Source: Macrostomum hystrix
Lineage: Eukaryota > Animalia > Platyhelminthes
NCBI GenBank assembly: GCA_950097015.1
Contig: CATNEN010000001.1
Location: forward strand, 18,290,001 to 18,354,000
DNA: 64,000 bases
Direction: 5' to 3'
The translations under genes and the position numbers were made by a program. This document shows positions 39 to 64,000 of the stretch, in pieces. Each line of letters begins with the position of its first letter. The first letter of the stretch is position 1. Under the pieces are notes generated by a model that was not told where the DNA came from, ran no database searches, and saw nothing but the letters and a program-made list of their open reading frames with translations.

Positions 39-2486
39 TTAATCGGAGTCGCTATCAGAAGACTCCGAATCTTCTGAAGCAACCGCTTCATTAGCGCTCT
101 GACTCAGTGTGCTGAGGGAGAACTTATTCGCAAGAAGATATTTTACAGCATCAGTCACGCTTTTACTTGCAACATCTTCAAGCAGTCTTCTAAACAATTC
201 CCGAAATTGAGCGGCTAAGCCCGGCTGATTCGCTAAGTCATCACAGAGGCTCTGCAAATTAACCTGAAGGTCAACCCACTCATCTGAAATAATATGCGCT
301 TCTTCTTTTAGGCGTTTATATTTGATACTGACGTCTATAGCCCGCTGACGAAATCGGATGGAAAGGTCGGTTCCAGACAAATGTTCATATTTCGCACTAC
401 GCGGTTTTTTATATTCATCGAAAGAAGCTCTGTCTTCAATTGGAAGACGAGCGTAGAGTTTTTTCATGTCGGATGCATAACTTTTAACCTTTCGCAAGCA
501 CATTCTGGTTTGACTTTGGCCAACTGACTTACCAACCTGTTTACTCCAATGATCTCTGTGCACTGCAAGAGCGCGTAGCTCACATAGGATATCATCTTCC
601 GAGTTGTGTACAGCTACTCGGAGGGAATCTTCATACCATTGGGAGCCTAAATCCAAAATTTCATCCTCAGAGATGACCAGACTGTCATTTAGGACCCCCG
701 AGTGCTGCAAAATCGCAGACTGGCTTTGTAGCTCTTTTAGTTCACTTAGAATGCTTTTTCCCGCACCTACCATAAGCTTAATACGTTGTGTAAACCACCC
801 AGAAGCGCTAAGAAGCTGTTGTGCATTAAAGAAGTATAGAATATGCGCCATGTATTGTGCTCGTCGGTCTTTTCGCATGTACTTTAAAAACTTACCGAAC
901 GGCCTGAGTTGAGACCAGGCTCGCTCAGTATTCTCTCCATCGCATAGACCTGCGCCTGGAGTAACGCGAACAGAAAACTTTTTTTGACAACTGGGCAGGT
1001 GACCAAGAGCATGAAAAGCGTTTATTGCACAGCTACTCGCTTGAATGTTGGCACCAGACTTCGCAATAGCGGACGTAACCCGGCTGGATACGCGACAGCC
1101 TGTGAATTGGGATAAAGAGTAAGTCATGTTGTCATATAACTGTACACAAGCAACAGTATTTCATAGATTGTACGCATTTTATAAATTAATAATAAACTTA
1201 CCCACGTCATATACGACAAGTAATTCCTTAGACACTTTGACGTTTCGCAGAAAGTGTTCAAGGCACTGTTCCAGGTAGCAAAACTTTTCTCGACCAGTTG
1301 TGATATTTGAGCCACACAAAAGGCGATTGTGACGACAGAATAATCCAAAGAAACCCGTGACATCATGTCTCTGCTCACGGCTTAATGGTTCATGAGCACC
1401 GGCCTTCCAATTAGGACAATTCTGTTCCTCTGCTCGATTTTTTGGCACATCCGCTTTAATATCTACATAGACAAGCGGCGTAGGTAATGGACGACCATCT
1501 GATGGTATTTCCAGTTGTGTACGCCCCCTGGCTTTAAAGCGCTGCCAACCAAATAGAGCATCTGCACAGACAACAGTTTTGCGCACAGCGTGATTATCTG
1601 GACAGAGAAGACAATTATTTGGCCATTTTGCTGAGGCCATTTGCAGGTGGCGAAACCGCAGCAAAACATCATGTCGTTGAATGCGTTGATAAGTGCTTTT
1701 TACTAGAGCCAAATTATATGTACCTTGTCCCAGAGTTGGCCCAATGAGCAGTGTACTGACCGCTCTGTGAACAGGCAACTGCCCAGTCATACACAAACTG
1801 TCTAGCAGGGACAAAAAGGTAAAAGAAAAGAATGCATACCCATCTGAATCAGGCTTTGACCCTTCGCAACAAGGGAAGAACCCTTGGGAAAGGAGTGCAC
1901 CAATAAGATCACAGGAGTCGCAGGTAATAAAAATGACCTTTACGCTTCCAGCCAGATCTATAAGGTCAACTTTTGTAGCCGCACAGACATTCAGATTCAA
2001 TTTACTAGAAGCGCAGCAAAACATTTCAAAAGCATCGTGAGTAGCATCCAGTTCCTGAAACATTAGACTCTCCTTATTCCATATGAGAAACTTGTGGGCT
2101 GAAAACTTTTTATGCGTCTCATTTTTACAGCTGGCACATAAGCTAAGTCGACAAGTAACACATCGATATACACCTTCGTGCTCATAGCAAGAGGAACACA
2201 GATTTAAGAGAAAATGCTTCTCGTAACTACCTCTGTATTTCTCAGCAAAGCTGTCAAAATCTACCCATTCAACATCTTCTACTGTAGGAGCAAAAGACTC
2301 AGGCATACCGACATCATTCTCGGTGCTAGCTTCCACTGGAACAGGAGTAGTTTCAGACACAGGACGCCGAGATGTTGAGCCTCGATTTCGGCCGCTAATG
2401 ATTGTCTTAATCTTTCTGGGTCGCCCACGACAGCCAGTTTGCAGTGTAGCTTTGACAACACGCTTCAGTTCGATGCCGCGATACAT
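39..2486 (-). CDS. KDZ (Kyakuja-Dileera-Zisupton) family transposase with N-terminal AT-hook and Cys/His zinc (CxC-type) domains; 2 coding exons (2486-1202, 1099-39)
   Basis: Removing a GT-AG intron at 1201-1100 joins two ORFs into YDVG|CR. KDZ motifs present: CADALF, CRH, GREKF, YDVGC, FHALGH...CQ, GAGLCDGENTERAWS. Also RGRPRK and CxxC...CxxC...CxxC...H...H. Confidence 0.85.
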
Positions 2487-9915: not shown

Positions 9916-12443
9916 TTAGAGCAGCGTGCAGCATCGGTTGGTCTTCTTAGCTGTCTGATAGAAGGCCTTGCTCTGGGCGCTCAGGGCATCCGACCTGGCC
10001 ACCAGATCGTCCAGCTTCTCGCCGCGCTGCAGCAGGCTGTCCATCGTCTGGCTGAGGATGCCCTTGGTCTCGTCGATTTCGCTCTGGATTCGCATCATGG
10101 CGTCGGCCTGCTTGGGATCCTGATAGCGGGCCAGATCCGCCTCTAGCTGCTTGAACTGCACCTGACTGTCGAGCGGCGTGGCGGAGGGTGGACAGCACAG
10201 TTAATTAGAGGGACGAACTGAAGCTTCAGTTTGGGAAAGGATGTCAGTGCTGAGGGTTCAGGTTGGGAAAGGATGTCAGTGCTGAGGGTTCAGGTTGGGA
10301 ATGGATGTCAGTCCTGAGGGTTCAGGTTGGGAATGGATGTCAGTCCTGAGGGTTCAGTTTGGGAAAGGATGTCAGTGCTGAGGGTTCAGGTTGGGAATGG
10401 ATGTCAGTGCTGAGGGTTCAGGTTGGGAATGGATGTCGGTCCTGAGGGTTCAGGTTGGGAAAGGATGTCAGTCCTGAGGGTTTAGGTTGGGAATGGATGT
10501 CAGTGCTGAGGGTTCAGGTTGGGAATGGATGTCAGTCCTGAGGGTTTAGGTTGGGAATGGATGTCAGTGCTGAGGGTTCAGGTTGGGAAAGGATGTCAGT
10601 GCTGAGGGTTCAGGTTGGGAAAGGATGTCAGTCCTGAGGGTTTAGGTTGGGAATGGATGTCAGTGCTGAGGGTTCAGGTTGGGAATGGATGTCAGTCCTG
10701 AGGGTTTAGGTTGGGAATGGATGTCAGTGCTGAGGGTTCAGGTTGGGAATGGATGTCAGTCCTGAGGGTTCAGGTTGGGAAAGGATGTCAGTCCTGAGGG
10801 TTTAGGTTGGGAATGGATGTCAGTGCTGAGGGTTCAGGTTGGGAAAGGATGTCAGTCCTGAGGGTTTAGGTTGGGAATGGATGTCAGTGCTGAGGGTTCA
10901 GGTTGGGAATGGATGTCAGTGCTGAGGGTTCAGGTTGGGAAAGAATGTCAGTCCTGAGGGTTTAGGTTGGGAATGGATGTCAGTGCTGAGGGTTCAGGTT
11001 GGGAAAGGATGTCAGTCCTGAGGGTTTAGGTTGGGAATGGATGTCAGTGCTGAGGGTTCAGGTTGGGAATGGATGTCTTGAAGGTCCCGAAGAATCTCAC
11101 CCGGCCTGCAGGCTGGACCAGGACGATGCGGGGTACTGCTTGGTGAAGTCGTCAAGGATCTGAAAATAAAATTAAAAAAGTGCCAACTCAGTTTTCTTAG
11201 AAATAAATTGGCAAATTGTCAAACACAAGAAACTGTCGGACCTTGTTGAGCAGTGTCTGAGCAACCCTATCTGGGTATTCATCGTCTGAGATGCAGATCC
11301 CAGCCAGATAGTCGCCGCGGATATAGCAGTGGCAGATGTAGGCCTGCTCGCGCACCTTGCTCCGATTGCAGCGCTGTGAGCGTTCCACAACCAGCTTGCC
11401 GGTGAAGTCCATGAACTCCTTCACGCTGCGCGGGGAAAGTGGGGCAGGAATTGAAATAATAGTAATCGGAGTGCCCTGCGTGCACTGCCGCAGACTTGGT
11501 GCCAGTTCAAGCGTGAATGTAAGAGGAAAGAGGGGAAAGAGCCAGCAAGTGGTCGAAAGGGTTGAGGATGAAAGATAAGAAAGGGAAGAGCAAAGGAAGA
11601 TAGGGAAGAGGAAGGCAGGGAAGAGGAAGGCAGGGAAGAGGAAGGCAGGGAAGAGGAAGGCAGGGAAGAGGAAGGCAGGGAAGAGGAAGGCAGGGAAGAG
11701 GAAGGCAGGATAGAGGAAGGCAGGGAAGAGGAAGGCATGGAAGAGGAAGGCAGGGAAGAGGAAGGCAGGGAAGAGGAAGGCAGGATAGAGGAAGGCAGGG
11801 AAGAGGAAGGCAGGGAAGAGGAAGGCAGGGAAGAGGAAGGCAGGATAGAGGAAGGCAGGGAAGAGGAAGGCAGGGAAGAGGAAGGCAGGGAAGAGGAAGG
11901 CAGGGAAGAGGAAGGCAGGATAGAGGAAGGCAGGGAAGAGGAAGGCAGGGAAGAGGAAGGCAGGGAAGAGGAAGGCAGGGAAGAGGAAGGCATGGAAGAG
12001 GAAGGCATGGAAGAGGAAGGCAGGGAAGAGGAAGGCATGGAAGAGGAAGGCAGGGAAGAGGAAGGCAGGGAAGAGGAAGGCAGGGAAGAGGAAGGCAGGG
12101 AAGAGGAAGGCATGGAAGAGGAAGGCAGGGAAGAGGAAGGCAGGGAAGAGAAAGGCAGGGAAGAGGAAGGCAGGGAAGCGGAGGCAGGGAAGAGGAAGGC
12201 AGGATAGAGGAAATGGACTGAAAGGAAGAGGAAGGCAGGAAAAGAAGGAGGAAGGCAGGGAAGGGAGGAAAGGGAAGAGAAGCTAGCAGGAGGGTGGAAC
12301 GAGCCATGAAGATCAGAGCAGTCGGTTACTCACGCTTTCTTCTCAAAGAAGCCGAAGGAGTTGAGATCGTGAGCCACAGCCAGTGGTGAGGCCTGGTCGC
12401 TAGTCTCAGATTTATAAAGAACTTGCAGTGAGTAGAGCTTCAT
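9916..12443 (-). CDS. YKT6: Synaptobrevin homolog YKT6 (longin R-SNARE), ~200 aa; exons 12443-12334, 11425-11242, 11159-11101, 10165-9916
   Basis: MKLYSL start, DLNSFGFF, DDEYP longin motif, LLQRGEKLDDLV SNARE motif, C-terminal CCTLL prenylation motif. All GT-AG junctions are phase-compatible. Confidence 0.95.
10221..11077. repeat. 32-bp minisatellite in YKT6 intron 3
   Basis: Unit GGGTTCAGGTTGGGAATGGATGTCAGTGCTGA. Confidence 0.95.
11600..12210. repeat. 15-bp purine-rich minisatellite in YKT6 intron 1
   Basis: Unit GGGAAGAGGAAGGCA. Confidence 0.95.
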
Positions 12444-13994: not shown

Positions 13995-15420
13995 TCTATC
14001 TCACAGTCTGACTCACACTCTCACCATCTAACTGATCTATCTCACAGTCTGACTCACACTCTCACCATCCAACTGATCTATCTCACAGTATGACTCACAC
14101 TCTCACCATCCAACTGATCTATCTCACAGTATGACTCACACTCTCACCATCCAACTGATCTATCTCACAGTCTGACTCACTCTCACCATCTAACTGATCT
14201 ATCTCACAGTCTGACTCACACTCTCACCATCCAACTGATCTATCTCACAGTATGACTCACACTCTCACCATCTGACTGATCTATCTCACAGTCTAACTCA
14301 CACTCTCACCATCCAACTGATCTATCTCAGTCTGGCTCACACTCTCACCATCCAACTGATCTATCTCACAGTCTGGCTCACACTCTCACCATCCAACTGA
14401 TCTATCTCACAGTCTAACTCACACTCTCACCATCCAACTGATCTATCTCACAGTCTGACTCACACTCTCACCATCCAACTGATCTATCTCACAGTCTAAC
14501 TCACACTCTCACCATCCAACTGATCTATCTCACAGTATGACTCACACTCTCACCATCCAACTGATCTATCTCACAGTCTAAGTCACACTCTCACCATCCA
14601 ACTGATCTATCTCACAGTCTAACTCACACTCTCACCATCCAACTGATCTATCTCACAGTATGACTCACACTCTCACCATCCAACTGATCTATCTCACAGT
14701 CTGGCTCACACTCTCACCATCCAACTGATCTATCTCACAGTATGACTCACTCTCACCATCCAACTGATCTATCTCACAGTCTAACTCACACTCTCACCAT
14801 CTAACTGATCTATCTCACAGTATGACTCACACTCTCACCATCCAACTGATCTATCTCACAGTCTAACTCACACTCTCACCATCCAACTGATCTATCTCAC
14901 AGTCTAACTCACACTCTCACCATCTAATGATCTATCTCACAGTATGACTCACACTCTCACCATCTAATGATCTATCTCACAGTATGACTCACACTCTCAC
15001 CATCCAACTGATCTATCTCACAGTCTGGCTCACACTCTCACCATCCAACTGATCTATCTCACAGTATGACTCACACTCTCACCATCTAACTGATCTATCT
15101 CACAGTCTGACTCACTCTCACCATCTAACTGATCTATCTCACAGTCTGACTCACACTCTCACCATCCAACTGATCTATCTCAGTCTGGCTCACACTCTCA
15201 CCATCCAACTGATCTATCTCACAGTCTAACTCACACTCTCACCATCCAACTGATCTATCTCACAGTATGACTCACACTCTCACCATCCAACTGATCTATC
15301 TCACAGTCTAAGTCACACTCTCACCATCCAACTGATCTATCTCACAGTCTAACTCACACTCTCACCATCCAACTGATCTATCTCACAGTCTAACTCACAC
15401 TCTCACCATCCAACTGATCT
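13995..15420. repeat. 41-bp minisatellite (~35 copies)
   Basis: Unit TCTATCTCACAGTCTGACTCACACTCTCACCATCCAACTGA. Confidence 0.95.
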
Positions 15421-45467: not shown

Positions 45468-46011
45468 CATCCCGATTGGCTGCAATCTCCATCCCGAATC
45501 CATTCCCCATCCTGATTGGCTGAGATCTCCATCCTGAACCTATTCCCCATTCTGATTGGCTGAGATCTCCGTCCTTTACCCATTCTCGTCCTGATTGGCT
45601 GAGGTCTCTATCCTGAATCCATTACCCATCCTGATTGGCGAGATCTCCATCCTGAATCCATTACCCATCCTGATTGGCGAGATCTCTATCCTGAATCCAT
45701 TACCCATCCTGATTGGCGAGATCTCTTTCCTGAATCCATTCCCTATCCTGATTGGCTGAGATCTCTATCCTGAACCCATTAACCATCCTGATTGGCTGAG
45801 ATCTCTATCCTGAACCCATTCCCCATCCTGATTGGCCGCTATCTTCATCCAGAATCCATTCCTCATCCTGATTGGCTGATACTCGTATCTTCATCCTAAA
45901 TCCATTCCCCATCCTGATTGGCTGAGATCTCCATCCTAAATCCATTCCCCATCCTGATTGGCTGAGATCTCCATCCTGAACCCATTACCCATCCTGATAG
46001 GCTGAGATCTC
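45468..46011. repeat. ~40-bp minisatellite
   Basis: Unit CATCCTGATTGGCTGAGATCTCCATCCTGAATCCATTCCC. Confidence 0.9.
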
Positions 46012-46696: not shown

Positions 46697-49600
46697 TCAA
46701 TGACAGCTAGCACATACCTGTTCAGTCAGCGGCATTGTCAGCGATCTCTTAAACCGCTGCAGCCTTGCGCGGATCCAGTCTTCTCTCTGCTGCGCCACCG
46801 TTTCCATGGAAACATTATTGCGCCCAATTCGAATCAGCTTCTCTCTGACCCAGCGGATCTTCTCAAAGTCCTGCGTCTCCATGGCGACGCGTTTCTCGTC
46901 TCTGAGCATCTCCATCTGCCGCAAGCTGAACTCCACGTGCTCAACTTGGTCGCTGTAGTGAGCCAGAGTGAGCAGCTCCTCCAAGTCCGGGTCCTCTTGC
47001 AGCTTTGAGAGCCACGCATCGAAGTCGATTGTGGTGAGATCGTGGAGCAGTTCAGCTTGGAGACTCCAGCTCAGGCAGCGGAAGTTCACGTACAGGTGGG
47101 AGGAGCGAGGCTGTGACAGTCTGGCTGTGAGCAGAGTCTGCGTGAACTCGGGAAGGAATGGGAATCGAGGCGGAGTGTCTGCGGGGAGGCAGAACCTCCA
47201 CGCCCAGTCCGAGTCTTGAGGCACTCTGATATCCGACTGCACTATTTGAGTGTCACACGGCCCCCATCCGTTTTGAAGGGTGTGACTTTGCAGCTCCATC
47301 AGGAGTCTCTCAGCCTCCTCGGAGTCTCCGAACTTCCGATGCGCCATGGCAGTCATGCTCAGGGCAGCGCACTTGCACCACCGCAGATGATCCAGCAGAC
47401 TGAGTTGCCTCATCAGCGTGTCTCTGTCACATGACCCTGACTGCAGCTCGGCCATGCACTGCCGCACCACGCTGAACACATCAACAAACTGTCTTATCTT
47501 CTCTTTCCGAATTTCCGAGACGTCAGGAAGCGTTTTCAGGGGGAGCAGAGTGAACGGATGAAAGTAGAAGTTCTCTGACTGCAGAGGCCTCACGAGTCTC
47601 CTCATCTGCTCAACCACTCTGCCGATATCCAGCTCTCTCAGTCGGTCTCGAACCCTCACCTTCGTGTTGTCGAAGTCGCCCCCTACTCCAGCGTTCTTGA
47701 AGTAGAGCGGAGCGTCGGACATGAAGAAGTGCGGCATGCACTCATCGGGTGAGCTGCTTGAGTCGATGAAGCTCAGCATCTTGTTGAGAGACTCCTTCAG
47801 TAGTGAGATCAGATTCCGAGGCTGCCAAGCTGTTTTATCTGTTCTGCGATGCTTCTCTAGCATGAAGAAAAGCAGAGTCTTTGCATGGTAAGTCTTGAGT
47901 CCAGGTGTGTCCAAAGAGAATGGCAAGTATCTCTTGAAAATGAACTTGATGAGCGTGAAGAGCTGACCTTGTACAGTGTTCAGCTGGCTCATTGTACTTT
48001 TCTCGTGGAAACTGAAGCTCACTCTGAGCTCGTTTGTCGAGTTCGGTCTGGTTGCCCTCACGAGATGCACAGGGTCAAGGTCATCGTCTTCTCTTCGTCT
48101 TATGAGTGACTTGATCCTCTCATCACACAATGAGCTGCAGCACCGGAGGGCATGGCAGGTGTCCTGAGCAGGTCGCACACCGCATGTGTCAGCTCTCACA
48201 GCAGGTTGGTTTCCTATGGAAAGATTGTGGCCTGAGTCATTCAAATCGATAGATCGAAGATTGATTCATAAAATAGTGAATGTGGAGTTTATGCTGAACT
48301 GAAGCTTAGTTCAAAATGCAGAAGTGATCATTCTCTCTTGAAATTAATGTCTAGGAAGCGCCAACATGGACGCGCTCTCACCCAATCCAACGGCCACCTG
48401 AGCATGGCCTTCCGTGACCAATAGCTTTGCCGTGACACCGTGACACTTGCAGCCGTCCTGCAGATGAAACTCGTTGCCTTCAACCAGCACAGTCCAGTCG
48501 ATGTCGGAGTCTGTCGCTGTCCTGCCGTTCACTTGCACCAGACTGTTGGCCCAGCCCTCTGCGTAGCTGCCTGTCATCCACCTGTCATCGTGGGCGAGGA
48601 CTCCAGCAACTTCCTCCAGCCATTCGGCCATTCTCTGCTGGCACTCCACTCTCTCTCTCGTGAATCCCGCCTCGTTGAGTAGTGCGTGCAGTTCCTCACT
48701 GAGCAGACCGTCTTCTGGTGTGACATTTCTGAGGAGCGCGATTGGGTGGGATAACTGGTCTACTCACAGATGGAAGTCTGGGAGCATTCTTCGGCCTACA
48801 CAGACCTGCAATCTGTCGTTATCGAGAATGTTAAACTGCGCTTCGGTCAATCAGAGTTTATGGTGCTCAAGGAACTTTTTGATTACCTAATAAAAACCGC
48901 AGGTATACGACAACTGGTACATAAAGTTAGCTGTGTAAAATAATACATACGAAATGAGTCGCGAATTATCGAGTCGAGAAACCTGCTGTTGTGACCCTGA
49001 GGTGCCAGAATTTCTGAAAAGAACGACAGGATTGTCTTTTAAGTGCACCGAGACACACACAAGAATACACATATTCTACGAATTTTGTATATTGCGAGTT
49101 AGCATCGCTACTATGCATTAAATTATGAGTTCTACTCGTAATTGCAGCATGTCTTGTGTTTTTTGTGTTTATTACCTAACAAAAATGTGAGAACGGGTAT
49201 CCAAAAAGTATTATACTCCCTACTGCTCACTCACCTGACAGTCTGGGGCTTCAGCAGACGCAGCAGCTCCGTGTGTCCCAGCTGCTCCGCCACCCGCGCA
49301 CACGTCAGACCCCGACAGTCCCGATGACTCGCATCCGCTTTTCTGTCCATCAGAGTCTGAGCTGCTCGCACGTGACCCGCTTCACAAGCTCGCAACAGAG
49401 CTGTCCGACCCTGACTGTCTTCAGCTTGCACTGACGCCCCGAGATCCACCAGTTTCTTAATGAGATCGTGATGACCTGCATCAGCTGCCAGCATGAGAGC
49501 AGTGGCTCCTGTGTCGTCTGGCAAATCGACATGCTCTCTTTTGAATCGTTCGTCAAGTAGTGTCAGAGTCAGTGCGACATCGCCAAGCGAGATGGTGATA

Positions 49601-52005
49601 CGAAGCAGCTGTATGATCTGACGTGGCTGCATTTTAGAGAGAGTCTGCTTGAGAACGGAATTCCTGCCCTCCATCGCCCTCGAGGCGGTGAAGCTGAGGA
49701 CTTGGCTGGATTGGAAGAGCCAGTCAGGCTCCACACCGACATATTCAACGCAATCGTCTTGAAAACGTGAGCAAGCTGCGATCGCACATTCAAAACGGCA
49801 GTTCCAAATGTGTTCGTCAGGTATCGACTGTAAAAAAACTTTCAAAACTTCGCTCTTACCTTCGAGTGCCGCCAGCTTCGATAGTTCCAAGCAGCAAACA
49901 GTTCTTAAACTTGAATCTGTTAAACGATCTAAAAAGGACTTCGAATTCTCCCACTGACTTTGCCCTCCAGCCTCGCGTGCCATCTCAAAGCAGCACCGAT
50001 TTCTGATGGATTTGTCTAAGATTTTATCCACCAGAAATTGTGCCACCTCAAACTGACCTCTGTCTGCTGCTCCTTTGCCTGCTTGGGCCCAGAACCGATC
50101 TCTCAAGGTCGGATCAGTGATTTTCTCTGCTAGAAGCTGTACCACTCGTCCCAAATGACCACTGACTGCTGCCTCTGTACCAGCTTGAACGCAGAACCGA
50201 TCTCTCTCTGTCTGATCAGTGATGTTTTCTGCTAGAAGCCACACCACTTCAAACTGACCACTGACTGCTGCCTCTGTACCAGCTTGAACGCAGAACCGAT
50301 GTTTCTCGGTCTGATCAGTGATTTTCTCTGCTAGAAACTGTACCACTTCAAACTGACCTCTGACTGCTGCCGCCGTGCCTGCTTGAACGCAGAACCGATG
50401 TTTCTCGGTCTGATCAGTGATTTTCTCTGCTAGAAACTGTACCACTCCCAACTGACCACTGACTGCTGCCTCTGTACCAGCTTGAACGCAGAACCGATCT
50501 CTCTCTGTCTGATCAGTGATTTTTCCTGCTAGAAGCCGTACCACTTCAAACTGACCACTGACTGCTGCCTCTGTACCAGCTTGAACGCAGAACCGATGTT
50601 TCTCGGTCTGATCAGTGATTTTCTCTGCTAGAAACTGTACCACTCCCAACTGACCACTGACTGCTGCCTCTGTACCAGCTTGAACGCAGAACCGATCTCT
50701 CTCTGTCTGATCAGTGATTTTTTCTGCTAGAAACTGTACCACTCCCAACTGACCACTGACTGCTGCCTCTGTACCAGCTTGAACGCAGAACCGATGTTTA
50801 TCTGTCTGATCAGTGATTTTTCCTGCTAGAAGCCGTACCACTTCAAACTGACCACTGACTGCTGCCTCTGTACCAGCTTGAACGCAGAACCGATGTTTCT
50901 CGGTCTGATCAGTGATTTTCTCTGCTAGAAACTGTACCACTCCCAACTGACCACTGACTGCTGCCTCTGTACCAGCTTGAACGCAGAACCGATGTTTCTT
51001 GGTCTGATCAGTGATTTTTCCTGCTAGAAGCCACACCACTTCAAACTGACCTCTGACTGCTGCCATTCTACCAGCTTGAACGCAGAACCGATCGCTCTCG
51101 GTCTGATCAGTGATTTTCTCTGCTAGAAATTGAACCACTTCCAACTGACCTCTGACTGCTGCCGCCGTGCCTGCTTGAACGCAGAACCGATCGCTCTCGG
51201 TCTGATCAGTGATTTTCTCTGCTAGAAATTGAACCACTTCCAACTGACCTCTGACTGCTGCCGCCGTGCCTGCTTGAACGCAGAACCGATCGCTCTCGGT
51301 CTGATCAGTGATTTTCTCTGCTAGAAATTGAACCACTTCCAACTGACCTCTGACTGCTGCCGCCGTGCCTGCTTGAACGCAGAACCGATCGCTCTCGGTC
51401 TGATCAGTGATTTTCTCTGCTAGAAATTGAACCACTCCCAACTGACCGCTGACTGCTGCCTCTGTACCAGCTTGAACAAAGAGCTCGTCTCTTTCGGTCT
51501 GATTACTCATTGTCTGTGTTAAAAAATTCGCCACTTCCAATTGACCACTGCTTTTTGCAACTTCAACGACTTGAATGCAGAACTGACCCCAGTAAGTCAT
51601 GTCATAGCAAACCAAAGCCAGAAATTTCACCGCATCTAAAAGACCATCAACGGCCGCTTTTTTGCCTGCTTCGATGAAGAACTGATTTATTTCAGACTGA
51701 CGAATAATTGTCTGTTTGAAAAGGATCACTATTTCACAATTTCTCTCAGCTACAGCTAAATCAAAAGTCTTCAAGCAGCACTGATCCTTCACAGTTTGGT
51801 CAGCGACTGACTGCACCAGAAACTTCACAGTTTCCCAATTCTTCTCCGATGCAGCTATCTCGACGACCTTCAAGCAGAGCTGATCTCGCACTTCTGGATC
51901 AACGACTGACGTCACCAGAAACTTTACAGTTCCCCAACTATTCTCCGATGCTGCTTTTTCGATTGCCATAAAATGCCGCTCATACTTTTTATCAAATGTC
52001 GCCAT
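46697..52005 (-). CDS. Ankyrin-repeat-fused cGAS-like receptor (Mab-21-family nucleotidyltransferase), ~1550-1570 aa; exons 52005-49235, [49013-48983, 48805-48768 optional], 48728-48382, 48213-46697
   Basis: NTase motif TGSYAEG...DSDIDW plus a candidate third Asp in QDTCHAL. Mab-21 motifs LRVSFSFHE, LKTYHAKTLLFFMLE, W...L, MPHFF. Ankyrin repeats upstream. Splice phases join all ORFs in frame. Confidence 0.85.
50090..51480 (-). repeat. Coding 99-bp (33-aa) ankyrin-like tandem array, ~14 near-identical units
   Basis: Consensus RFCVQAGTEAAVSGQLGVVQFLAEKITDQTEKH; 99-bp nucleotide period (e.g. 51181 vs 51280). Confidence 0.95.
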
Positions 52006-54989: not shown

Positions 54990-57900
54990 ATGTTTGACTA
55001 TCATCACCAACAGCAGCTTCTGGCGCCGCTGGTTCGGATCCGACCTGCAGCCCCTTTGACGCCGCAAGTTTATGGAACAGCCTCCAAAAGACAACAACCC
55101 CAGGATTCAGCGTGCTTCTTCGCTGTCAAGACCAGCGTCAAGTCAGGGGACATTGCGGGACCCATTCGATCCGCCGGTGGGAGCTTGGCCAAGACAGCTT
55201 ACAACCCTACTCGGTGAGACTTGTTTCATAATTTTGCTCCAACTGCGGTTCGCTATGATGGGAGTTAAAGAAGAGATTGAATTTGCGTAGTCTGAGATCA
55301 CTCGATCATCAGGGAGTGCTTGGTCTGAGATCACTCCATTATCAGGGAGTGCTTGGTCTGAGATCACTCGATCATCAGGGAGTACTTGGTCTGAGATCAC
55401 TCCATTATCAGGGAGTGCTTGGTCTGGGATCACTCGATCATCAGGGAGTGCTTGGTCTGAGATCACTCCATTATCAGGGAGTGCTTGGTCTGAGATCACT
55501 CGATCATCAGGGAGTGCTTGGTCTGAGATCACTCGATCATCAGGGAGTGCTTGGTATGGGATCAGTTTATCATCAGAGAGTGCTTGGTCTGAGATCACTC
55601 GATCATCAGAGAGTGCTTGGTCTGGGATCACTCGATCATCAGAGAGTGCTTGGTCTGTGATCACTCCATTATCAGGGAGTGCTTGGTCTGAGATTACTCG
55701 ATCATCAGGGAGTGCTTGGTCTGGGATCAGTTTATCATCAGAGAGTGCTTGGTCTGTGATCACTCCATTATCAGGGAGTGCTTGGTCTGGGATCACTCGA
55801 TCATCAGGGAGTGCTTGGTCTGGGATCACTCGATCATCAGGGAGTGCTTGGTATGGGATCAGTTTATCATCAGAGAGTGCTTGGTCTGAGATCACTCGAT
55901 CATCAGAGAGTGCTTGGTCTGAGATCACTCCATTATCAGGGAGTGCTTGGTCTGAGATCACTCGATCATCAGGGAGTGCTTGGTCTGAGATCACTCGATC
56001 ATCAGGGAGTGCTTGGTCAGAGATCACTCCATTATCAGGGAGTGCTTGGTCTGAGATCACTCGATCATCAGGGAGTGCTTGGTCAGAGATCACTCGATCA
56101 TCAGGGAGTGCTTGGTATGAGATCACTCGATCACCAGGGAGTGCTTTGTCTGAGATCACTCGATCACCAGGGAGTGCTTGGTCTGAGATCACTCGATCAT
56201 AACTTACGCTCGTAGTCTGAGATCACTTGACAGAAAATGAGAACATTTTCGCGAATGTTTCGCGGCCTTTATTCTCATGTCCTGAATCTCGATTCACTTC
56301 AGCAACGCAGTGAGCAGTCGGTACACGAACAATGACTGGGCCAACTTCAACAAGGCCAGTCACAGGCAATCCAGTCGGGAGCGCTCAGCGGCGGAGCAGA
56401 CTAAAGCGGATGCTTGGGTCGCCATACGCGACACGGACGTCAGAACCCGGCTTCGGCAGGCCGACGTGTCTAAGAAGCTGAGTTGAGTGCCTTGTCCACT
56501 ATAGTATAGTGAATCATAATATAATAGTCTTATCCCCATCTTCTCAAATAGCTTCTGTTCCGCTTGTCTATTTCACGCAACAATAATCTCGACAATCAAT
56601 TGAAAGGTGAACGAGTGGCGGACATCGAGTACTGGCTGGAGCAGCTGGCTTCAGAAGCGGAGTTGAACTGCGCAGAGACGGAGGATCTGACGGTACCTGC
56701 TAAATATTTTGCTAATTTACTAAGTATGAAAGCTTTACAGGTTGAACTTAGGCACTATAGGGACACTAATTTTCTCAGCGGAATCGAGCTCAGGGACCCT
56801 GGTGCGGGAGGCAAACGCGTTAGACGGCTCAGCAACTCACCCCCACTAAGCTAACCCACTAAGACAAGCTCCCTGACTATACCAGTAACGAGCAACTAAA
56901 GCGCCAGCTTTAACTGGAATTCTACTCTGCCTTCTAGCACACCTAGGGTGAGAGGTCTCCCGAAATTTCACCTATAGCCTGAACAGCACTTTATTGAGGT
57001 GAATTATAGATCAGCACCAAAGAATGTGACGCATGCAGGCACATCTGCAACAGCACATTCTAACACCTGATTCCACACAGATTAGCGGTTTGAACTCACT
57101 AGTTAGCGTCGTTAAAACAGGCACAAACTTTATGAAATGCCAACTTCAGGACCACATCCGCGTGCTGGAGTCTTACATTGCTTACACGGCAAAGCCACTG
57201 AACATGTCTGAGCAGTGCCTGGCGCTCAGGGAGCAACGAATGGGTATCGATTTAGTTCACGACGAGGTCGAGAGGCAGCTGAATCGGGTGAGTCAGAAAT
57301 GATGCGAAATTGCTAGGAATGCTAGACTACTCTGGTGTGAGCAGTAACAGGATCGTTAGAATTATCTGACAGAATAGATAGATAAAACCTAGCCCAGTTA
57401 GCATAGATGCACAGCCAGTAGCACAGCCGTATGAGCAGTCTCAGGACTATATGAGCAGTCTCAGGAGTATGTGAGCAGTCTCAGGACCATATGAGCAGTC
57501 TCAGGAGTATGTGAGCAGTCTCAGGACTATATGAGCAGTCTAGGCAGTATATGAGCAGTCCATGAGTATGTGAGCAGTCTCAGGACTATATGAGCAGTCT
57601 TAGGAGTATATGATCAGTCTCAGCGGTATATGAGCACTCTCAGGACCATATGAGCAGTCTCAGGAGTATGTGAGCAGTCTCAGGACTATATGAGCAGTCT
57701 AGGCAGTATATGAGCAGTCCATGAGTATGTGAGCAGTCTCAGGACTATATTAGCAGTCTTAGGAGTATATGAGCAGTCTCAGCGGTATATGAGCACTCTC
57801 AGGACTATATGAGCAGTCTTAGGAGTATATAATCAGTCTCAGGACTATATGAGCAGTCTTAGGAGTATATGATCAGTCTCAGCGGTATATGAGCACTCTC

Positions 57901-60898
57901 AGGACTATATGAGCAGTCTTAGGAGTATGTGAGCAGTCTCAGGACTATATGAGCAGTCTCAGGACTATATGAGCAGTCTAGGCAGTATATGAGCAGTCCA
58001 TGAGTATGTGAGCAGTCTCAGGACTATATGAGCAGTCTTAGGAGTATATGATCAGTCTCAGCGGTATATGAGCACTCTCAGGACCATATGAGCAGTCTCA
58101 GGAGTATGTGAGCAGTCTCAGGACTATATGAGCAGTCTAGGCAGTATATGAGCAGTCCATGAGTATGTGAGCAGTCTCAGGACTATATTAGCAGTCTTAG
58201 GAGTATATGAGCAGTCTCAGCGGTATATGAGCACTCTCAGGACTATATGAGCAGTCTTAGGAGTATATAATCAGTCTCAGGACTATATGAGCAGTCTTAG
58301 GAGTATATGAGCAGTCTCAGCGGTATATGAGCACTCTCAGGAGTATATGTGCAGTCTCATGGTTTTATGAGTAGTGGGACGATTACATGAGCAGTCTCAG
58401 CATCAAATAAGCAGTTTTGGGACCTTTTCAGTCCAAAAATTAGATGATCGGTCTGAGAATGCTAACATTAGCTTAAACAAGGCTCGCATCGACTTCTAAA
58501 CCCGGCCCTAACAGGAGGTGGAGATCATCCGCAGGTGTCAGGACCAAATGCGCAAAATGGCTGAGAAGTCGAGAGCTCAACTCAAGTGAGTTCTCACTGA
58601 TCGCATAAGAATCAGAATCTTAATCCTACATCGTACAAAACCTGTTATCTTCTTTCCATCTCATTGCAAAACTCAAGAATCAACTGGACAGCGCTGCAAG
58701 CCTTGAACAAAGACTTGCTGAATAAGAATCAGGCGCAGGCCATAGACGATAAGATGCGTCATCTGAGCAATTTCTCTGCCGAGATCGACTTTCACCCGGG
58801 TGCTGAGACTGCCGAGAAGTGGTAAGTTGAGTTATTTTTAGTTGAGTCTTTGCACCTGTGCACTAATACTCAACATATTCGTCACAAGAGCTTTTCCTTC
58901 TTCGATTTTTTTCGCAACTGCAGCTAGACTAGCAACTGTAACTGCAGCTAGAATAGTAGTTAACTGCAACTGCAGCTAGAATAGTAACTGCAACTGCAGC
59001 TAGAATAGCAACTGCAACTGCAGCTAGAATAGTAACTGCAACTGCAGCTAGAATAGCAACTGCAGCTAGAATAGTAACTGCAACTGCAGCTAGAATAGCA
59101 ACTGCAGCTAGAATAGTAACTGCAACTGCAGCTAGAATAGCAACTGCAGCTAGAATAGTAACTGCAACTGCAGCTAGAATAGCAACTGCAGCTAGAATAG
59201 TAACTGCAACTGCAGCTAGAATAGCAACTGCAGCTAGAATAGTAACTGCAACTGCAGCTAGAATAGCAACTGCAGCTAGAATAGTAACTGCAACTGCAGC
59301 TAGAATAGTAACTGCAACTGCAGCTAGAATAGTAACTGCAACTGCAGCTAGAATAGCAACTGCAGCTAGAATAGTAACTGCAACTGCAGCTAGAATAGTA
59401 ACTGCAACTGCAGCTAGAATAGTAACTGCAACTGCAGCTAGAATAGCAACTGCAGCTAGAATAGTAACTGCAACTGCAGCTAGAATAGTAACTGCAACTG
59501 CAGCTAGAATAGTAACTGCAACTGCAGCTAGAATAGTAACTGCAACTGCAGCTAGAATAGCAACTGCAGCTAGAATAGTAACTGCAACTGCAGCTAGAAT
59601 AGTAACTGCAACTGCAGCTAGAATAGTAACTGCAACTGCAGCTAGAATAGCAACTGCAGCTAGAATAGTAACTGCAACTGCAGCTAGAATAGTAACTGCT
59701 GCGCTGTCAGCTGCACATCTGAGCCGATTGGGGCAGGTGTAATCAAGTATTAATTTTTATAATCAAGTATTAGGTAAAACTTGTAATCAAGTATTAACAA
59801 TACACCACTCTGATCTTGTCCTCCTGCCGTCCCTCCAGCGTGAGCATCCCGCACTCGTGGGCCCGGCACTCCCAGGAGAACATCGGTCGATCGCACGGCT
59901 GTCGGGCGGCCTCGGAGCGTCAGCGCCGCGGCATCGCCGACCTGCTCCGCGCCTGTGCGAACGAAATTTGGAGCCAGTTCATTGCGGTGAATGCTGCGTT
60001 CGCGACTCGCATCAAGGAGGTCACGGATGTGCGCAACGGACTGCAAGCTCAGCTGCAGGGGGTAGGAAATTCGGGTTGTCGGAACTCAATTAGACTCATT
60101 CCATTCCCAATGAAACCGCCAACAACCGCATCAGACGCTGCAGGAGATCGCGGAGGCCGAGTGCTCGGCTGCGCTGCTCAGGCAAGCCTTGGCTGAGAAG
60201 GCGGCGCCGATGAAAGTGGCACAGACACGGCTGGAGGAGCGCGTTCGACGCCAAGACGTCGAGAGCTGCAACGACCCGGCGATGACGGCGTGAGTACACT
60301 GCTCACTACAGTGAACTCACTACAGAGAGGCCTTTGAGGGCCTGTCTTCCTCCTACTCAACCTCTCTCCCTCCTACTCTACCTCTCTCCCTCCTACTCTA
60401 CCTCTCTCCCTCCTACTCTACCTCTCTCCCTCCTACTCTACCTCTCTCCCTCCTACTCTACCTCTCTCCCTCCTACTCTACCTCTCTCCCTCCTACTCTA
60501 CCTCTCTCCCTCCTACTCTACCTCCTTCCCTCCTACTCTACCTCTCTCCCTCCTACTCTACCTCTCTCCCTCCTACTCTACCTCTCTCCCTCCTACTCTA
60601 CCTCTCTCCCTCCTACTCTACCTCCTTCCCTCCTACTTCACGCAGCCTCCAGCGGGAAGTCAGCGACCTGAAGGAGTCTTTGAACTTGCTGTCGCACCGG
60701 CTGAAGTCTGTGGAGTCGGCCCTGACAAGGCTCCACAGAAACCGCACGCAACTGGAGGCGGACATTCGCGTGAAGGAGAACTCGCTGCTCATAGACGCCA
60801 GGCAGTGTATGCCGATGCGGCACGCACCGCGGGGTGCCCAGCAACTGACGTTGCAGGCAAGACGGTCGAAGCCTCAGACTATTGGCCGGTCGAACTAA
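54990..60898 (+). CDS. Tektin (tektin-3/5-like); exons 54990-55213, 56303-56481, 56607-56692, 57150-57287, 58515-58585, 58678-58821, 59839-60061, 60135-60289, 60646-60898
   Basis: SRYTNNDW, ERVADIEYW, CLALREQRMGIDLVHDEVE, PMKVAQTRLEERVRRQDVESCND (variant tektin signature), IRVKENSLLID..QCM. Phases are consistent. Confidence 0.88.
55288..56200. repeat. 33-bp minisatellite in tektin intron 1
   Basis: Unit TCTGAGATCACTCGATCATCAGGGAGTGCTTGG. Confidence 0.95.
57430..58400. repeat. 20-bp minisatellite with higher-order structure in tektin intron 4
   Basis: Unit GAGCAGTCTCAGGA(C/G)TAT(A/G)T. Confidence 0.95.
58913..59699. repeat. 24/18-bp minisatellite in tektin intron 6
   Basis: Unit GCAGCTAGAATAGTAACTGCAACT. 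Confidence 0.95.
60349..60637. repeat. 20-bp pyrimidine minisatellite abutting the last tektin acceptor
   Basis: Unit CCTCTCTCCCTCCTACTCTA. Confidence 0.95.
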
Positions 60899-62484: not shown

Positions 62485-63558
62485 TTACGGCAGAAGCCGG
62501 AAGAAGTCGCGAATCTGCTGTTCAATCAGGGACGCGTTCGCAATGGCCACAGCCCGCACGACTCCATTTAGCGATTGGCCTCCTCCACTGAACCTACGAC
62601 CGACAGACATGACGAAGCAGGACTGCCTGGATACGTCTTGTCGATTGGTGCTACCTGGCACAATAAAGCTGCCGTTGAAGTACAAGTGAGTGGATATCAG
62701 ATAGCCAAGTCGGACAGAGACCGCGATGTCGATGAGTGAGCTGAAGCTCGCTGGCAGCTGGTTAGGGAGTGAATAGATGAGAAAATTATTAGAGTCATCG
62801 CTGCTACCCTGCTTGTTGAAATACAGTTGGTTGGCCTGACCATACTCCCACAAGTGAGGGCCAGTCTCCTGAAGGTTCGAGCAGGACACGGCTTCCATAA
62901 ACGGTTGATTTCTCGGCTGCCTCTTCAGCCTCATCAGCCACGTGAAGCTGGCCGAAGGGTCGGTCGAGACGAAGCGACTGTCGTTGAGCAGCGCGTAGGA
63001 CGAGTGTCCGTCGAACTGGGCGCCCTCCTCAGTCCACTGCAAGTTCGCACTCTCCAGTCGATAGCTGCTGCTCGAAGCACGCTCACCGCTCTGACACACC
63101 AGGTTGCTGAATCTGTTGCTCCCACCTGCCAGCCACACACCGACCAACTGAGCGTTGAGCAGCGAGGCGTCGCAGCTCGCCAACGACTTGGTGCGATACA
63201 CCGAGCACTGCTGCACCGAGCCGTCGACTGCGGCCTGATCGCTGCTGCTCGACTGGCCTCCCATCGGCCTTGCTCCACTCGCCTGCATCATGCGACACAC
63301 ATGGTGGTAGTGGAAGATCGAGCACACACCTGTCTGCTTGTTCCACTGAAGCACGAGGTCGTAAGGTGCGCTGCTCGCTTTCAACACGCAGCCGTGCAGG
63401 CTTTGCAGCGAGTTCCACCGAGTCATCGCCGAGCTGTCGTCGATGCACTGCATCATCCGGTACTGGCACCAGCGCCTGCTGCAGCTCGCAGTGGCCACCG
63501 ACACTCCCAGTAGAAGTAGCAGCAGGATACTGATGGTAACATTTAAAAAATAATTCAT
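62485..63558 (-). CDS. Secreted single-exon protein: signal peptide, Cys-rich PAN/apple-like module, LamG/concanavalin A-like (pentraxin-type) domain
   Basis: Hydrophobic N-terminus from the ATG at 63558. LamG-like pattern FDGHSSY, SFTW, LYFNG, SVGR...LNGVVRAVAI...L...QI. Confidence 0.7.
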   Translation of the reverse strand: MNYFLNVTISILLLLLLGVSVATASCSRRWCQYRMMQCIDDSSAMTRWNSLQSLHGCVLKASSAPYDLVLQWNKQTGVCSIFHYHHVCRMMQASGARPMGGQSSSSDQAAVDGSVQQCSVYRTKSLASCDASLLNAQLVGVWLAGGSNRFSNLVCQSGERASSSSYRLESANLQWTEEGAQFDGHSSYALLNDSRFVSTDPSASFTWLMRLKRQPRNQPFMEAVSCSNLQETGPHLWEYGQANQLYFNKQGSSDDSNNFLIYSLPNQLPASFSSLIDIAVSVRLGYLISTHLYFNGSFIVPGSTNRQDVSRQSCFVMSVGRRFSGGGQSLNGVVRAVAIANASLIEQQIRDFFRLLP

Positions 63559-64000
63559 TGTCAGGAGTTTCGTAGCCAACTATTTATATGTATTGTCAAG
63601 TCTAATCATGCGTTCTTCTCAACGGTAGAGCTTCAATATTTATATTGCTTAAATGGGAGCTTTTTGGAATAGCCATTAGACAGACAAGGCCTTGATCAAC
63701 AGATGCATATATTCTGTTTGCTGGGTTATAAGGATGGTGTTGAAAATGTCTTGGACCTTGAGAAGGACGAGGCTACGTCTGCTTCTAAGGGCCATCAGTA
63801 GAATTCACGGGAAAGACGGCATTCTTCACTAGAAGAAATGTTGGGCTTAAAAAACTTCTTGGTATTTTTCAGATCTTCAGCAGAGTGAAGAGATGACTGT
63901 TCAGACTGACAATGCGGCGAGGGCTTCACTTTCAGGAATTTTCTAGAATAATTGTATGTGGCAGCGTCGCTTCAGTTGAATGTGTAACACCTTCATGGCA

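What the first reader, a model, noticed from the sequence alone, without database searches (positions are those of the whole stretch)
50090..51480. Combinatorially shuffled variable 33-aa repeat array (TALE/HET-like) in the cGLR
Seen: ~14 units are near-identical at the DNA level, but amino-acid variation is concentrated in a few slots with a small alphabet: TE/TA/RM, S/R, LG/LE/FE, QF/WL/RL and SD/KH/RD. These recur in different combinations (three identical TA-R-LE-QF-SD units, then mosaics such as TE-S-FE-RL, TA-R-FE-QF, TE-S-FE-WL). The flanking repeats are much more diverged, and the units lack the canonical ankyrin TPLH hairpin. Known: fungal NLR WD40/ANK/TPR arrays generate new specificities by unequal crossover among highly similar repeats with variable surface positions. 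Inference: this is a recombination-driven diversification system for a nucleotide-signalling immune receptor in an animal, and possibly undescribed.
Basis: partly seen in the sequence, partly recalled or inferred. Interest (0 to 1): 0.88.

Follow-up and report, generated by a model that had tools for sequence, protein, structure and literature searches.

The report
Shuffled ankyrin-type array in flatworm cGLR
A Macrostomum flatworm gene joins a cGAS-like signalling enzyme to a run of about 14 very similar ankyrin-type repeats that recombination has visibly reshuffled; at this gene the variation looks near-neutral, but the wider gene family does show hot-spot positions like those of fungal immune receptors.

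Summary
The array is real. It has period 99 bp and 15.3 copies, lies on the minus strand, and sits in exon 1 of an intact three-exon, 1,544-codon gene that encodes an ANK-type solenoid followed by a cGAS-like NTase.

Recombination among units is well supported. Units are 89% identical within the array and about 60% identical to other arrays. 39% of informative site pairs show all four gametes, silent sites included.

Adaptive hypervariability is not shown at this locus:
- Silent diversity (0.15-0.17) exceeds replacement diversity (0.08-0.09).
- The 16 replacement variants hit 12 codons, against 12.8 expected at random.
- The slots lie on both helices, and three are canonical core positions.

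The same genome holds at least 13 more array loci (4-46 homogeneous units), and NTase exon 2 was seen just downstream of eight of them. There, replacements pile up at ANK positions 13, 14, 31 and 9 (p about 1e-19) while silent changes do not. M. lignano shows the same hot spots. That resembles the internally conserved repeats of fungal NLRs.

ANK-cGLR fusions and Macrostomum cGLRs were catalogued in 2023, and this scan noted the family earlier on other DNA of this genome. Polymorphism could not be tested.

The parts
49235..52005 (-). Exon 1 (2,771 nt). It runs from the start ATG at 52005 to the last base before the donor GT at 49234-49233, and encodes the whole ankyrin-type domain (about 27 units of 33 aa).
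   Evidence: ORF listing. 33-aa rows. Donor context CAG|GTGAGT. Pfam Ank_2 at 6.6e-45. AF2 model with Foldseek top hits AnkB 24 repeats, ankyrin-1 and NOMPC.
51511..52005 (-). Five diverged N-terminal units (aa 1-165).
   Evidence: TRF lists a separate weak two-copy array at 51769-51962.
50125..51510 (-). The homogenised array: 14 units of 99 bp (aa 166-627). The 12 cleanest units are at 50224-51411. The last unit carries a one-codon insertion.
   Evidence: AF2 pLDDT is about 90, and each unit is an 18-residue helix plus a 10-residue helix. phmmer against the designed ankyrin protein 4o60 gives E = 2.4e-11.
49729..50124 (-). About four diverged C-terminal units (aa 628-759).
49235..49728 (-). 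Conserved linker followed by three canonical ankyrin repeats (aa about 760-923).
   Evidence: Pfam Ank, Ank_2 and Ank_4 best stretches at aa 816-896. 71% identity to M. lignano P0001.
48729..49234 (-). Intron 1 (GT...AG).
   Evidence: Colinearity with P0001 and P0006.
48382..48728 (-). Exon 2 (347 nt): the N-terminal part of the nucleotidyltransferase core, carrying GSYAEG and DSDIDW.
   Evidence: Translation. Homology to M. lignano cGLR-family proteins.
48214..48381 (-). Intron 2 (GT...AG). It holds the in-frame stop codons that split the ORF listing.
46697..48213 (-). Exon 3 (1,517 nt including the stop): the rest of the NTase core, the Mab-21_C HhH domain and a helical C-terminal extension.
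   Evidence: Pfam PF20266 at 30.2 bits against a cut-off of 24.1. 62-71% identity to M. lignano proteins. Exon lengths sum to 4,635 nt, which is 1,545 codons.

Best explanation
The array is the central, recently homogenised part of the ankyrin-type solenoid of a 1,544-aa ANK-cGLR fusion protein in a Macrostomum flatworm. It evolves in the germline by unequal crossing-over and short-tract gene conversion among its 99-bp units (concerted evolution). About four old unit variants, which differ at both silent and replacement sites, have been duplicated and recombined, and this produces the 'small alphabet in different combinations' look. At this locus the variation fits near-neutral or mildly purifying evolution, so site-specific diversifying selection is not shown here.

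By inference, the solenoid is the ligand-sensing or regulatory domain that controls the cGAS-like enzyme. Changes in unit number and order alter that surface over evolutionary time. The family-wide hot spots at ankyrin positions 13/14, 9/10 and 31/33 suggest that this matters for recognition in the family.

Shown: gene structure, repeat type, recombination and the family pattern. Inferred: sensor role, immune function and any adaptive value.
For: Gene model:
- Canonical splice sites and consistent phases give 1,545 codons.
- The model is colinear with M. lignano P0001 and P0006.

Repeat type:
- Register-true alignment to a designed ankyrin protein.
- Solenoid model whose best matches are long ankyrin arrays.

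Enzyme:
- Mab-21_C domain over the Pfam cut-off.
- GS and DxD motifs in exon 2.
- cGAS, MAB21L1 and MB21D2 are the top structural matches for a 64%-identical homologue.

Concerted evolution:
- Units are 89% identical within the array and 58-62% identical to units of any other array.
- Edge units are diverged.
- Three identical units lie in a row, and there are two more identical pairs.
- No other locus in the 220-Mb genome carries this unit type at the DNA level.

Recombination:
- 60 of 153 informative site pairs show all four gametes, among them silent third positions of codons 7-9, 20, 21 and 31.

No positive-selection signal at this locus:
- piN/piS is 0.53-0.67 for the whole unit and 1.07 at the variable codons.
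- The 16:8 split of replacement to silent variant types is not different from neutral (p = 0.23), and their placement is random (P = 0.39).

Family pattern:
- At least 13 more array loci have 4-46 homogeneous units in open frames of up to 1,810 aa.
- Eight of them show NTase exon 2 just downstream.
- Replacement types are very uneven over positions (chi2 = 164, p = 1e-19; peaks at 13, 14, 31 and 9) while silent types are even (p = 0.11).
- M. lignano arrays show the same hot spots.
Against:
- Silent diversity of about 0.15 among units means the variants are old. Their persistence under homogenisation could itself reflect selection for diversity, which these tests cannot detect with only 12-13 units.
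- Surface mapping rests on homology to ankyrin numbering and a single-sequence model whose coordinates I could not read.
- No expression evidence exists for this locus, and no ligand, product or receptor is known.
- The whole-unit ratios near 1 in the paralogues also fit relaxed constraint.
Confidence: 0.7

Rival explanations
1. The slots are ligand-contact positions under positive diversifying selection, and unit shuffling is an adaptive generator of new recognition specificities for this particular receptor.
For: - The mosaic structure is real.
- Most slot changes are radical in charge or size: E/A/M, S/R, G/E, Q/W/R, E/G, S/K/R and D/H.
- Five of the slots (9, 10, 14, 17, 33) coincide with family hot spots.
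- The family hot spots include the canonical binding positions 13, 14 and 33.
- Old variants persist despite homogenisation (piS about 0.15).
Against: - piN/piS is below 1 for the whole unit and about 1 at the variable codons.
- Placement of replacements is no more clustered than random, and the overlap with family hot spots is not significant (P = 0.16).
- Position 13, the most variable in the family, is invariant here.
- Positions 17 and 22 change only between L and F, and by ankyrin numbering they are core positions.
- No other locus shares these unit types.
Confidence: 0.25
2. Neutral coding minisatellite. In a genome very prone to minisatellites, the array expanded by slippage or unequal exchange with no functional meaning beyond keeping a foldable spacer or scaffold.
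For: - The window alone holds more than 20 minisatellite arrays.
- The replacement-to-silent ratio and the placement of variants are indistinguishable from neutral.
- Very recent duplications of whole units are present.
Against: - The open frame is kept over 924 codons, with intact splice sites and an intact enzyme part.
- The other minisatellites have periods of 15-42 bp, and I did not examine whether any of them is coding.
- The same 33-aa framework is conserved at about 52% identity between array lineages and across species (my count from the consensus units; M. lignano consensus units).
- In the family, replacements are strongly position-specific while silent changes are not. A neutral repeat would not show that.
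Confidence: 0.2
3. Assembly artefact or pseudogene. The unit order or number is an assembler's guess, or the gene is dead.
For: - Tandem arrays of 89-100% identical units are hard to assemble.
- In-frame stops appear if the introns are read through.
- No reads could be laid on the locus.
Against: - The array is only 1.5 kb long, within the length of a single long read, in a 42-contig assembly.
- The stops lie inside introns with canonical GT...AG ends, and the exon phases fit.
- Every exon is homologous to annotated M. lignano proteins.
Confidence: 0.05

Closest known systems
[quoted passage not shown] Sources: Dyrka et al. 2014, PMC4986451; Chevanne et al. 2010, PMC2873952.
   Same: Both are open-ended solenoid repeats with very similar units inside one gene, diverged edge units, and exchange of units within a locus. 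In the paralogue group at 11.4-13.9 Mb units are also exchanged between loci. In the family, replacement hot spots include canonical ankyrin binding positions. Both are attached to a presumed innate-immune signalling module.
   Different: - The signalling module is a cGAS-like nucleotidyltransferase, not a NACHT or NB-ARC NTPase.
- The repeats are N-terminal rather than C-terminal.
- The host is an animal. Dyrka et al. found HIC repeats in only 0.8% of metazoan ANK/TPR/WD proteins.
- This locus falls just short of the 85% identity criterion (83%) and shows no positive selection.
- Repeat-number polymorphism is untested.
ANK-cGLR fusions catalogued by Li et al. 2023 (bioRxiv 10.1101/2023.02.22.529553 / PMC9980059), for example in Stylophora pistillata, together with the M. 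lignano cGLRs in their screening table.
   Same: Both join ankyrin repeats to a Mab21/cGLR core. The M. lignano entry quoted from their table (PAA86972.1) shows the same GS...DxD region as exon 2 here.
   Different: The text and the stored supplements I searched say nothing about long, internally homogenised arrays or variable positions. [quoted passage not shown]
Macrostomum lignano hypothetical proteins BOX15_Mlig034126g1 (P0056, 1,582 aa) and BOX15_Mlig028056g1 (P0057, 1,758 aa), and the shorter P0001-P0027.
   Same: They have the same architecture. The enzyme and canonical ankyrin parts are 62-71% identical to this gene. Their 33-aa units vary at positions 9, 10 and 13-16.
   Different: Their units belong to the DQCC...VVKFL type, about 52% identical to this locus's DRFCVQAG type. 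No protein in the 5.8-billion-sequence search carries this locus's unit type. Their arrays are less homogeneous (64-80% pairwise).
TALE repeats of Xanthomonas effectors.
   Same: Both have units of about 33-34 aa made of two helices, near-identical at the DNA level, that are shuffled by recombination. In the paralogues a di-residue (13/14) at the helix-helix turn is the most variable spot.
   Different: No homology was found. At this locus at least nine positions vary and position 13 is fixed. The array is acidic (pI 5.0, net charge about -18), which argues against DNA binding.

Membership tests
Ankyrin repeat (Pfam clan ANK) | Tandem units of 33 residues. | tested here: met
   TRF gives period 99 bp with 0% indels. 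The 33-aa rows stay in register across 27 units.
Ankyrin repeat (Pfam clan ANK) | Significant sequence match of the units themselves to ankyrin repeats. | tested here: met
   Eight array units against the PDB match designed ankyrin proteins 4o60 (E = 2.4e-11) and 4qfv (E = 4.1e-10), with AAxxGxLxVVxxL in register. Pfam Ank_2 gives 7 stretches over the ORF.
Ankyrin repeat (Pfam clan ANK) | TPLH motif and beta-hairpin loop between repeats. | tested here: not met
   VQAG replaces TPLH. The AF2 model has one continuous 18-residue helix where the hairpin and helix 1 would be. The three C-terminal canonical repeats do have the ATALMLAA/GH type motif.
Ankyrin repeat (Pfam clan ANK) | Ankyrin-type solenoid fold. 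| tested here: met
   Foldseek top hits are AnkB 24 repeats (E = 8.4e-8), ankyrin-1, NOMPC and DARPin fusions, with TM 0.42-0.54. The model comes from a single sequence, with pLDDT about 90 in the array.
cGAS-like receptor (cGLR / Mab21 nucleotidyltransferase) | Mab-21 C-terminal HhH/H2TH-like domain. | tested here: met
   PF20266 at 30.2 bits against a cut-off of 24.1, in exon 3.
cGAS-like receptor (cGLR / Mab21 nucleotidyltransferase) | cGAS-type bilobed NTase fold. | tested here: met
   Tested by proxy. The AF2 model of M. lignano P0003 was built on alignment A1, whose summary lists the two window exons at 68% and 70% identity to P0003. Its best matches are cGAS structures (prob 1.0, TM to target 0.50), MAB21L1 and MB21D2. 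Sequence alone gives only MAB21L1 at E = 0.24. The joined window protein was not folded.
cGAS-like receptor (cGLR / Mab21 nucleotidyltransferase) | Catalytic GS motif and acidic triad. | tested here: inconclusive
   GSYAEG and DSDIDW are present in exon 2, and the S and A of the GS motif are nearly invariant in the family alignment. The third acidic residue was not assigned residue by residue.
cGAS-like receptor (cGLR / Mab21 nucleotidyltransferase) | Ligand-dependent synthesis of a nucleotide second messenger, and a receptor for it. | not testable with these tools
   Only a weak STING_LBD match was found in the genome (25.6 bits against a cut-off of 27).
HIC repeat receptors (fungal NLR type) | At least 85% identity among repeats over at least 100 aa (Dyrka et al. 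2014). | tested here: inconclusive
   Mean pairwise protein identity is 82.6%, and 83.8% between neighbours, over 429 aa. The 99-aa stretch at aa 199-297 is 100% identical. This sits just under the criterion as I computed it. T-REKS itself was not run.
HIC repeat receptors (fungal NLR type) | Concerted evolution, meaning exchange of units within and between loci. | tested here: met
   Within the locus: 89% identity inside the array against about 60% to other arrays, and 39% four-gamete pairs. Between loci: not for this locus. Among paralogues it does occur: three identical DNA units are shared by the arrays at 11.41 and 12.78 Mb.
HIC repeat receptors (fungal NLR type) | Positive diversifying selection at a few positions on the binding surface. 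| tested here: not met
   This locus: piN/piS is 0.53-0.67 for the whole unit and 1.07 at the variable codons, and placement of replacements is random. Family: hot spots at 13, 14, 31 and 9 are highly significant, but the per-site replacement-to-silent ratio there is only 1.26-1.47.
HIC repeat receptors (fungal NLR type) | Repeat-number polymorphism among individuals. | not testable with these tools
HIC repeat receptors (fungal NLR type) | STAND NTPase (NACHT or NB-ARC) as the central module. | tested here: not met
   Pfam finds only ANK and Mab-21_C in the three exon ORFs.
TALE repeats | One hypervariable di-residue per otherwise invariant unit, on a DNA-binding superhelix. | tested here: not met
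   Nine or more positions vary and position 13 is fixed. The array has pI 5.0 and net charge about -18. All structural matches are ankyrin proteins.

The most novel reading that the evidence does not exclude
Macrostomum flatworms would have an animal counterpart of the fungal HIC-repeat NLR system. In this reading, dozens of germline cGLR genes carry ankyrin-type sensor solenoids that are continually rebuilt by unit shuffling within and between loci. Recognition would be set by a few hot-spot residues per unit (13/14, 9/10, 31/33), giving a rapidly evolving and individually variable repertoire of nucleotide-signalling receptors. This locus would be one lineage-specific member of that system.
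Probability: 0.3. Interest if true: 0.85.

Novelty: new variant of a known kind. Interest (0 to 1): 0.5.

Why it matters
cGLRs are known as sensors whose ligands are mostly unknown, and most are bare enzymes without an appended recognition domain. A family in which the enzyme hangs on a long, recombining and internally homogenised solenoid would be different. It would show that animals have arrived at the repeat-shuffling route to receptor diversity known from fungal NLRs. It would also offer a tractable model, because Macrostomum is a laboratory flatworm, for asking what non-nucleic-acid ligands cGLRs can sense.

For this particular locus the lesson is more cautious. A striking combinatorial pattern can arise from a handful of old variants plus duplication and recombination, without any detectable selection for diversity.

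Tried and rejected
Polymorphism, expression and assembly accuracy at this locus stay untested.
Paralogues were studied only on the 3.4-3.6 kb loci returned by the genome search, merged where they overlap.
- Pseudogene reading. The in-frame stops between the two downstream ORFs lie in a 168-nt intron with GT...AG ends, so this was rejected.
- TALE-like or nucleic-acid-binding code. Rejected because the array is acidic and varies at many positions.
- Shared unit types with other loci. None was found at the DNA level in the genome, and none among 5.8 billion proteins.
- Surface mapping. The model's coordinates are not readable from scripts, so solvent exposure of the slots could not be computed. 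Mapping is by ankyrin/DARPin numbering only.
- Tree-based site models of selection. Not run, because recombination among units invalidates a single tree. Pairwise Nei-Gojobori and variant-type counts were used instead.
- Joined spliced protein. It was not built or searched. The exons were searched apart by reference.
- Direct sequence link of exon 3 to solved cGAS structures. Only MAB21L1 at E = 0.24.
Full report
**What is there.** Tandem Repeats Finder reports one array at 50033-51550 with period 99, 15.3 copies, 89% matches and no indels. It lies on the minus strand inside a 924-codon open frame, 49231-52005. In rows of 33 residues the whole frame is periodic:
- five diverged units (aa 1-165);
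- fourteen similar units (aa 166-627, window 50125-51510);
- about four diverged units;
- a conserved linker;
- three canonical ankyrin repeats (Pfam Ank_2 at 6.6e-45, best stretch aa 816-896).

Three units (aa 199-297) are identical at the DNA level, and so are the pairs aa 364/463 and aa 430/496.

**The gene.** Two downstream frames on the same strand carry the GSYAEG...DSDIDW nucleotidyltransferase motif and a Mab-21_C domain (PF20266, 30.2 bits against a cut-off of 24.1). Reading the sequence gives three exons with canonical GT...AG introns of 506 and 168 nt and matching phases: exon 1 at 52005-49235, exon 2 at 48728-48382, and exon 3 at 48213-46697. Together they make 1,545 codons. The stops that split the ORF listing lie in intron 2. 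The model is colinear with annotated Macrostomum lignano proteins, at 71% identity over the canonical ankyrin part and 62% over the enzyme part. All homologues of exon 3 that carry a source name are from M. lignano, and the best is 71% identical, so the window comes from a Macrostomum flatworm with a 220-Mb, 42-contig assembly. I did not build or search the joined protein. The exons were searched apart by reference.

**Is it a cGLR?** By sequence alone the link to solved structures is weak (MAB21L1 at E = 0.24). An AlphaFold model of the M. lignano homologue P0003, built on an alignment in which the two window exons are 68% and 70% identical to it, has cGAS structures as its best Foldseek matches (probability 1.0, TM to target 0.50), followed by MAB21L1 and MB21D2. 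Li et al. 2023 list ANK-cGLR fusions as a known architecture. Their screening table contains M. lignano proteins, and the one entry quoted to me (PAA86972.1) shows the same motif region. The third catalytic acid was not assigned here.

**Are the units ankyrin repeats?** Eight array units match designed ankyrin proteins in the PDB (4o60, E = 2.4e-11) in strict register. This fixes the standard numbering as D1 R F C V Q A G T9 E10 A A V13 S14 G Q L17 G18 V V Q21 F22 L A E25 K I T D Q T E32 K33, with VQAG standing where TPLH would be. A single-sequence AlphaFold model is confident in the array (pLDDT about 90). It gives each unit an 18-residue helix and a 10-residue helix with no hairpin. Its best structural matches are AnkB 24 repeats, ankyrin-1, NOMPC and DARPin fusions. 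The units are therefore an ankyrin-type solenoid of a variant kind.

**Recombination.**
- Units are 89% identical at the DNA level within the array, but only 58-62% identical to units of any other array in the genome.
- No other locus carries this unit type, either at the DNA level or among 5.8 billion proteins.
- The edge units are diverged, as expected when exchange homogenises the middle of an array.
- Among ten distinct units there are 18 informative sites, and 60 of the 153 site pairs show all four gametes. These pairs include silent third positions of codons 7, 8, 9, 20, 21 and 31.
- Multi-nucleotide block haplotypes occur in different combinations. For example GCA-GGC-ACG-GCG versus GCT-GGT-ACA-GAG at codons 7-10, and GTT-CAA versus GTA-CAG at codons 20-21.

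Unequal exchange and short-tract conversion are well supported. The 'combinatorial shuffling' is real.

**Selection at this locus.**
- Nei-Gojobori diversity among the twelve clean units is piS = 0.147 and piN = 0.082, a ratio of 0.56. It is 0.67 on distinct units and 0.53 with thirteen units.
- At the codons that vary the ratio is 1.07.
- Counting variant types, which is unaffected by copy number, gives 16 replacement and 8 silent variants. That split is not different from the neutral 77:23 expectation (p = 0.23).
- The 16 replacements fall in 12 of 33 codons, against 12.8 expected if they were placed at random (P = 0.39).
- The overlap with the family's hot spots is 5 of 9 positions (P = 0.16).

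By ankyrin numbering the slots are scattered:
- positions 33, 1 and 14 are at or next to the canonical binding face;
- positions 18, 21 and 25 are on the outer helix;
- positions 10, 17 and 22 are canonical core positions, and 17 and 22 switch only between L and F, mostly together.

Position 13, the most variable in the family, is fixed here. The simplest account is about four old unit variants that have been copied and recombined.

**The family.** A protein search of the genome with six units found 129 matches in many long open frames. On the loci I could read there are at least 13 further array loci. They hold 4-46 homogeneous units each, in open frames of up to 1,810 aa, with units 84-92% identical at the DNA level within an array. 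Eight of these loci show NTase exon 2 just downstream within the stretch fetched. Arrays between 11.4 and 13.9 Mb are as similar to each other as they are internally (about 87-91%), and two of them share three identical units. This points to exchange between loci or to very recent duplication.

Whole-unit piN/piS is 0.86-2.08 in these arrays. Replacement types are very unevenly spread over the 33 positions (chi2 = 164, p = 1e-19), with peaks at 14, 13, 31 and 9, while silent types are evenly spread (p = 0.11). Up to seven residue types occur at position 14 within one array. The per-site ratio at the hot spots is only 1.26-1.47, so positive selection is suggested but not proven. M. lignano has long-array members (P0056 at 1,582 aa; P0057 at 1,758 aa with Mab-21_C), and their variable positions again include 9, 10 and 13-16.

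[quoted passage not shown] Those show repeat-number polymorphism, concerted evolution and positive selection at a few binding-face positions. Such repeats were found in only 0.8% of metazoan ANK/TPR/WD proteins (Dyrka et al. 2014, PMC4986451). This locus is not a member of that family: it has no STAND NTPase, its unit identity is 83% rather than 85% or more, and it shows no positive selection. The Macrostomum family as a whole does behave like it. The ANK-cGLR architecture itself is catalogued. Full-text searches found no description of homogenised arrays on cGLRs. Earlier notes of this scan had already flagged and followed up the same family on other DNA of this genome. I re-derived the family pattern independently from the loci I fetched.

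**Limits.**
- No reads could be used.
- Paralogue context was limited to loci of about 3.5 kb.
- Model coordinates were not readable.
- Selection tests on 12-13 recombining units have little power.
- Immune function, the ligand, the enzyme product and the receptor are all inferred. The genome gave only a sub-threshold STING-like match.

**Verdict.**
The pattern is real, but the concentration in slots is not beyond chance, and the units are 89% identical rather than near-identical.
The gene is a recombining ankyrin-type array in a cGLR, and adaptive diversification is not shown at this locus.
- The family-level phenomenon is a new variant of a known kind and deserves population data.

Noticed in passing
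window 39-2486 (-): Two adjacent ORFs (362 and 435 aa) match the Kyakuja-Dileera-Zisupton (KDZ) transposase, PF18758, at 6.8e-16 and 1.1e-8. They cover the two halves of the profile. This looks like one transposase gene split by an intron or a frameshift.
   Followed up: partly
window 5115-62213, many places: The window is packed with minisatellites. More than 20 arrays have periods of 15-42 bp and up to 49 copies, for example 10218-11077, 13995-15420 and 57430-58400. One of them (45468-46011, period 40) starts about 700 bp beyond the stop codon of the cGLR gene.
   Followed up: no
window 55143-56200: A 33-bp minisatellite of about 27 copies (55290-56200) fills an open frame of 349 aa on the minus strand that has no Pfam match. 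An 11-residue coding-like periodicity may be chance.
   Followed up: no
G000:C1:11414350-11419797 (loci L014, L017, L020): In a 1,476-aa open frame the N-terminal leader of this gene family (the stretch around 'QMGQKISFERAVAQGL...') occurs twice, near aa 100 and near aa 1,156, each time followed by its own repeat array. Two tandem gene heads appear to lie in one continuous open frame.
   Followed up: no
G000:C1:12760843-12764343 and 12772193-12775693 (L023, L024): Two array-bearing gene copies 11.35 kb apart differ by 2 nt in 3,501, and their 7-unit arrays are identical. This is either a very recent segmental duplication or a duplicated assembly stretch.
   Followed up: partly
G000:C2:9104529-9104996 (-): This is the only STING ligand-binding-domain match in the genome: 25.6 bits, just under the Pfam cut-off of 27, in a 337-aa open frame. 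It is a candidate receptor for cGLR products.
   Followed up: no
window 62485-63579 (-): A 364-aa ORF has a weak Laminin_G_3 / concanavalin-like lectin match (2e-5, just under the cut-off).
   Followed up: no
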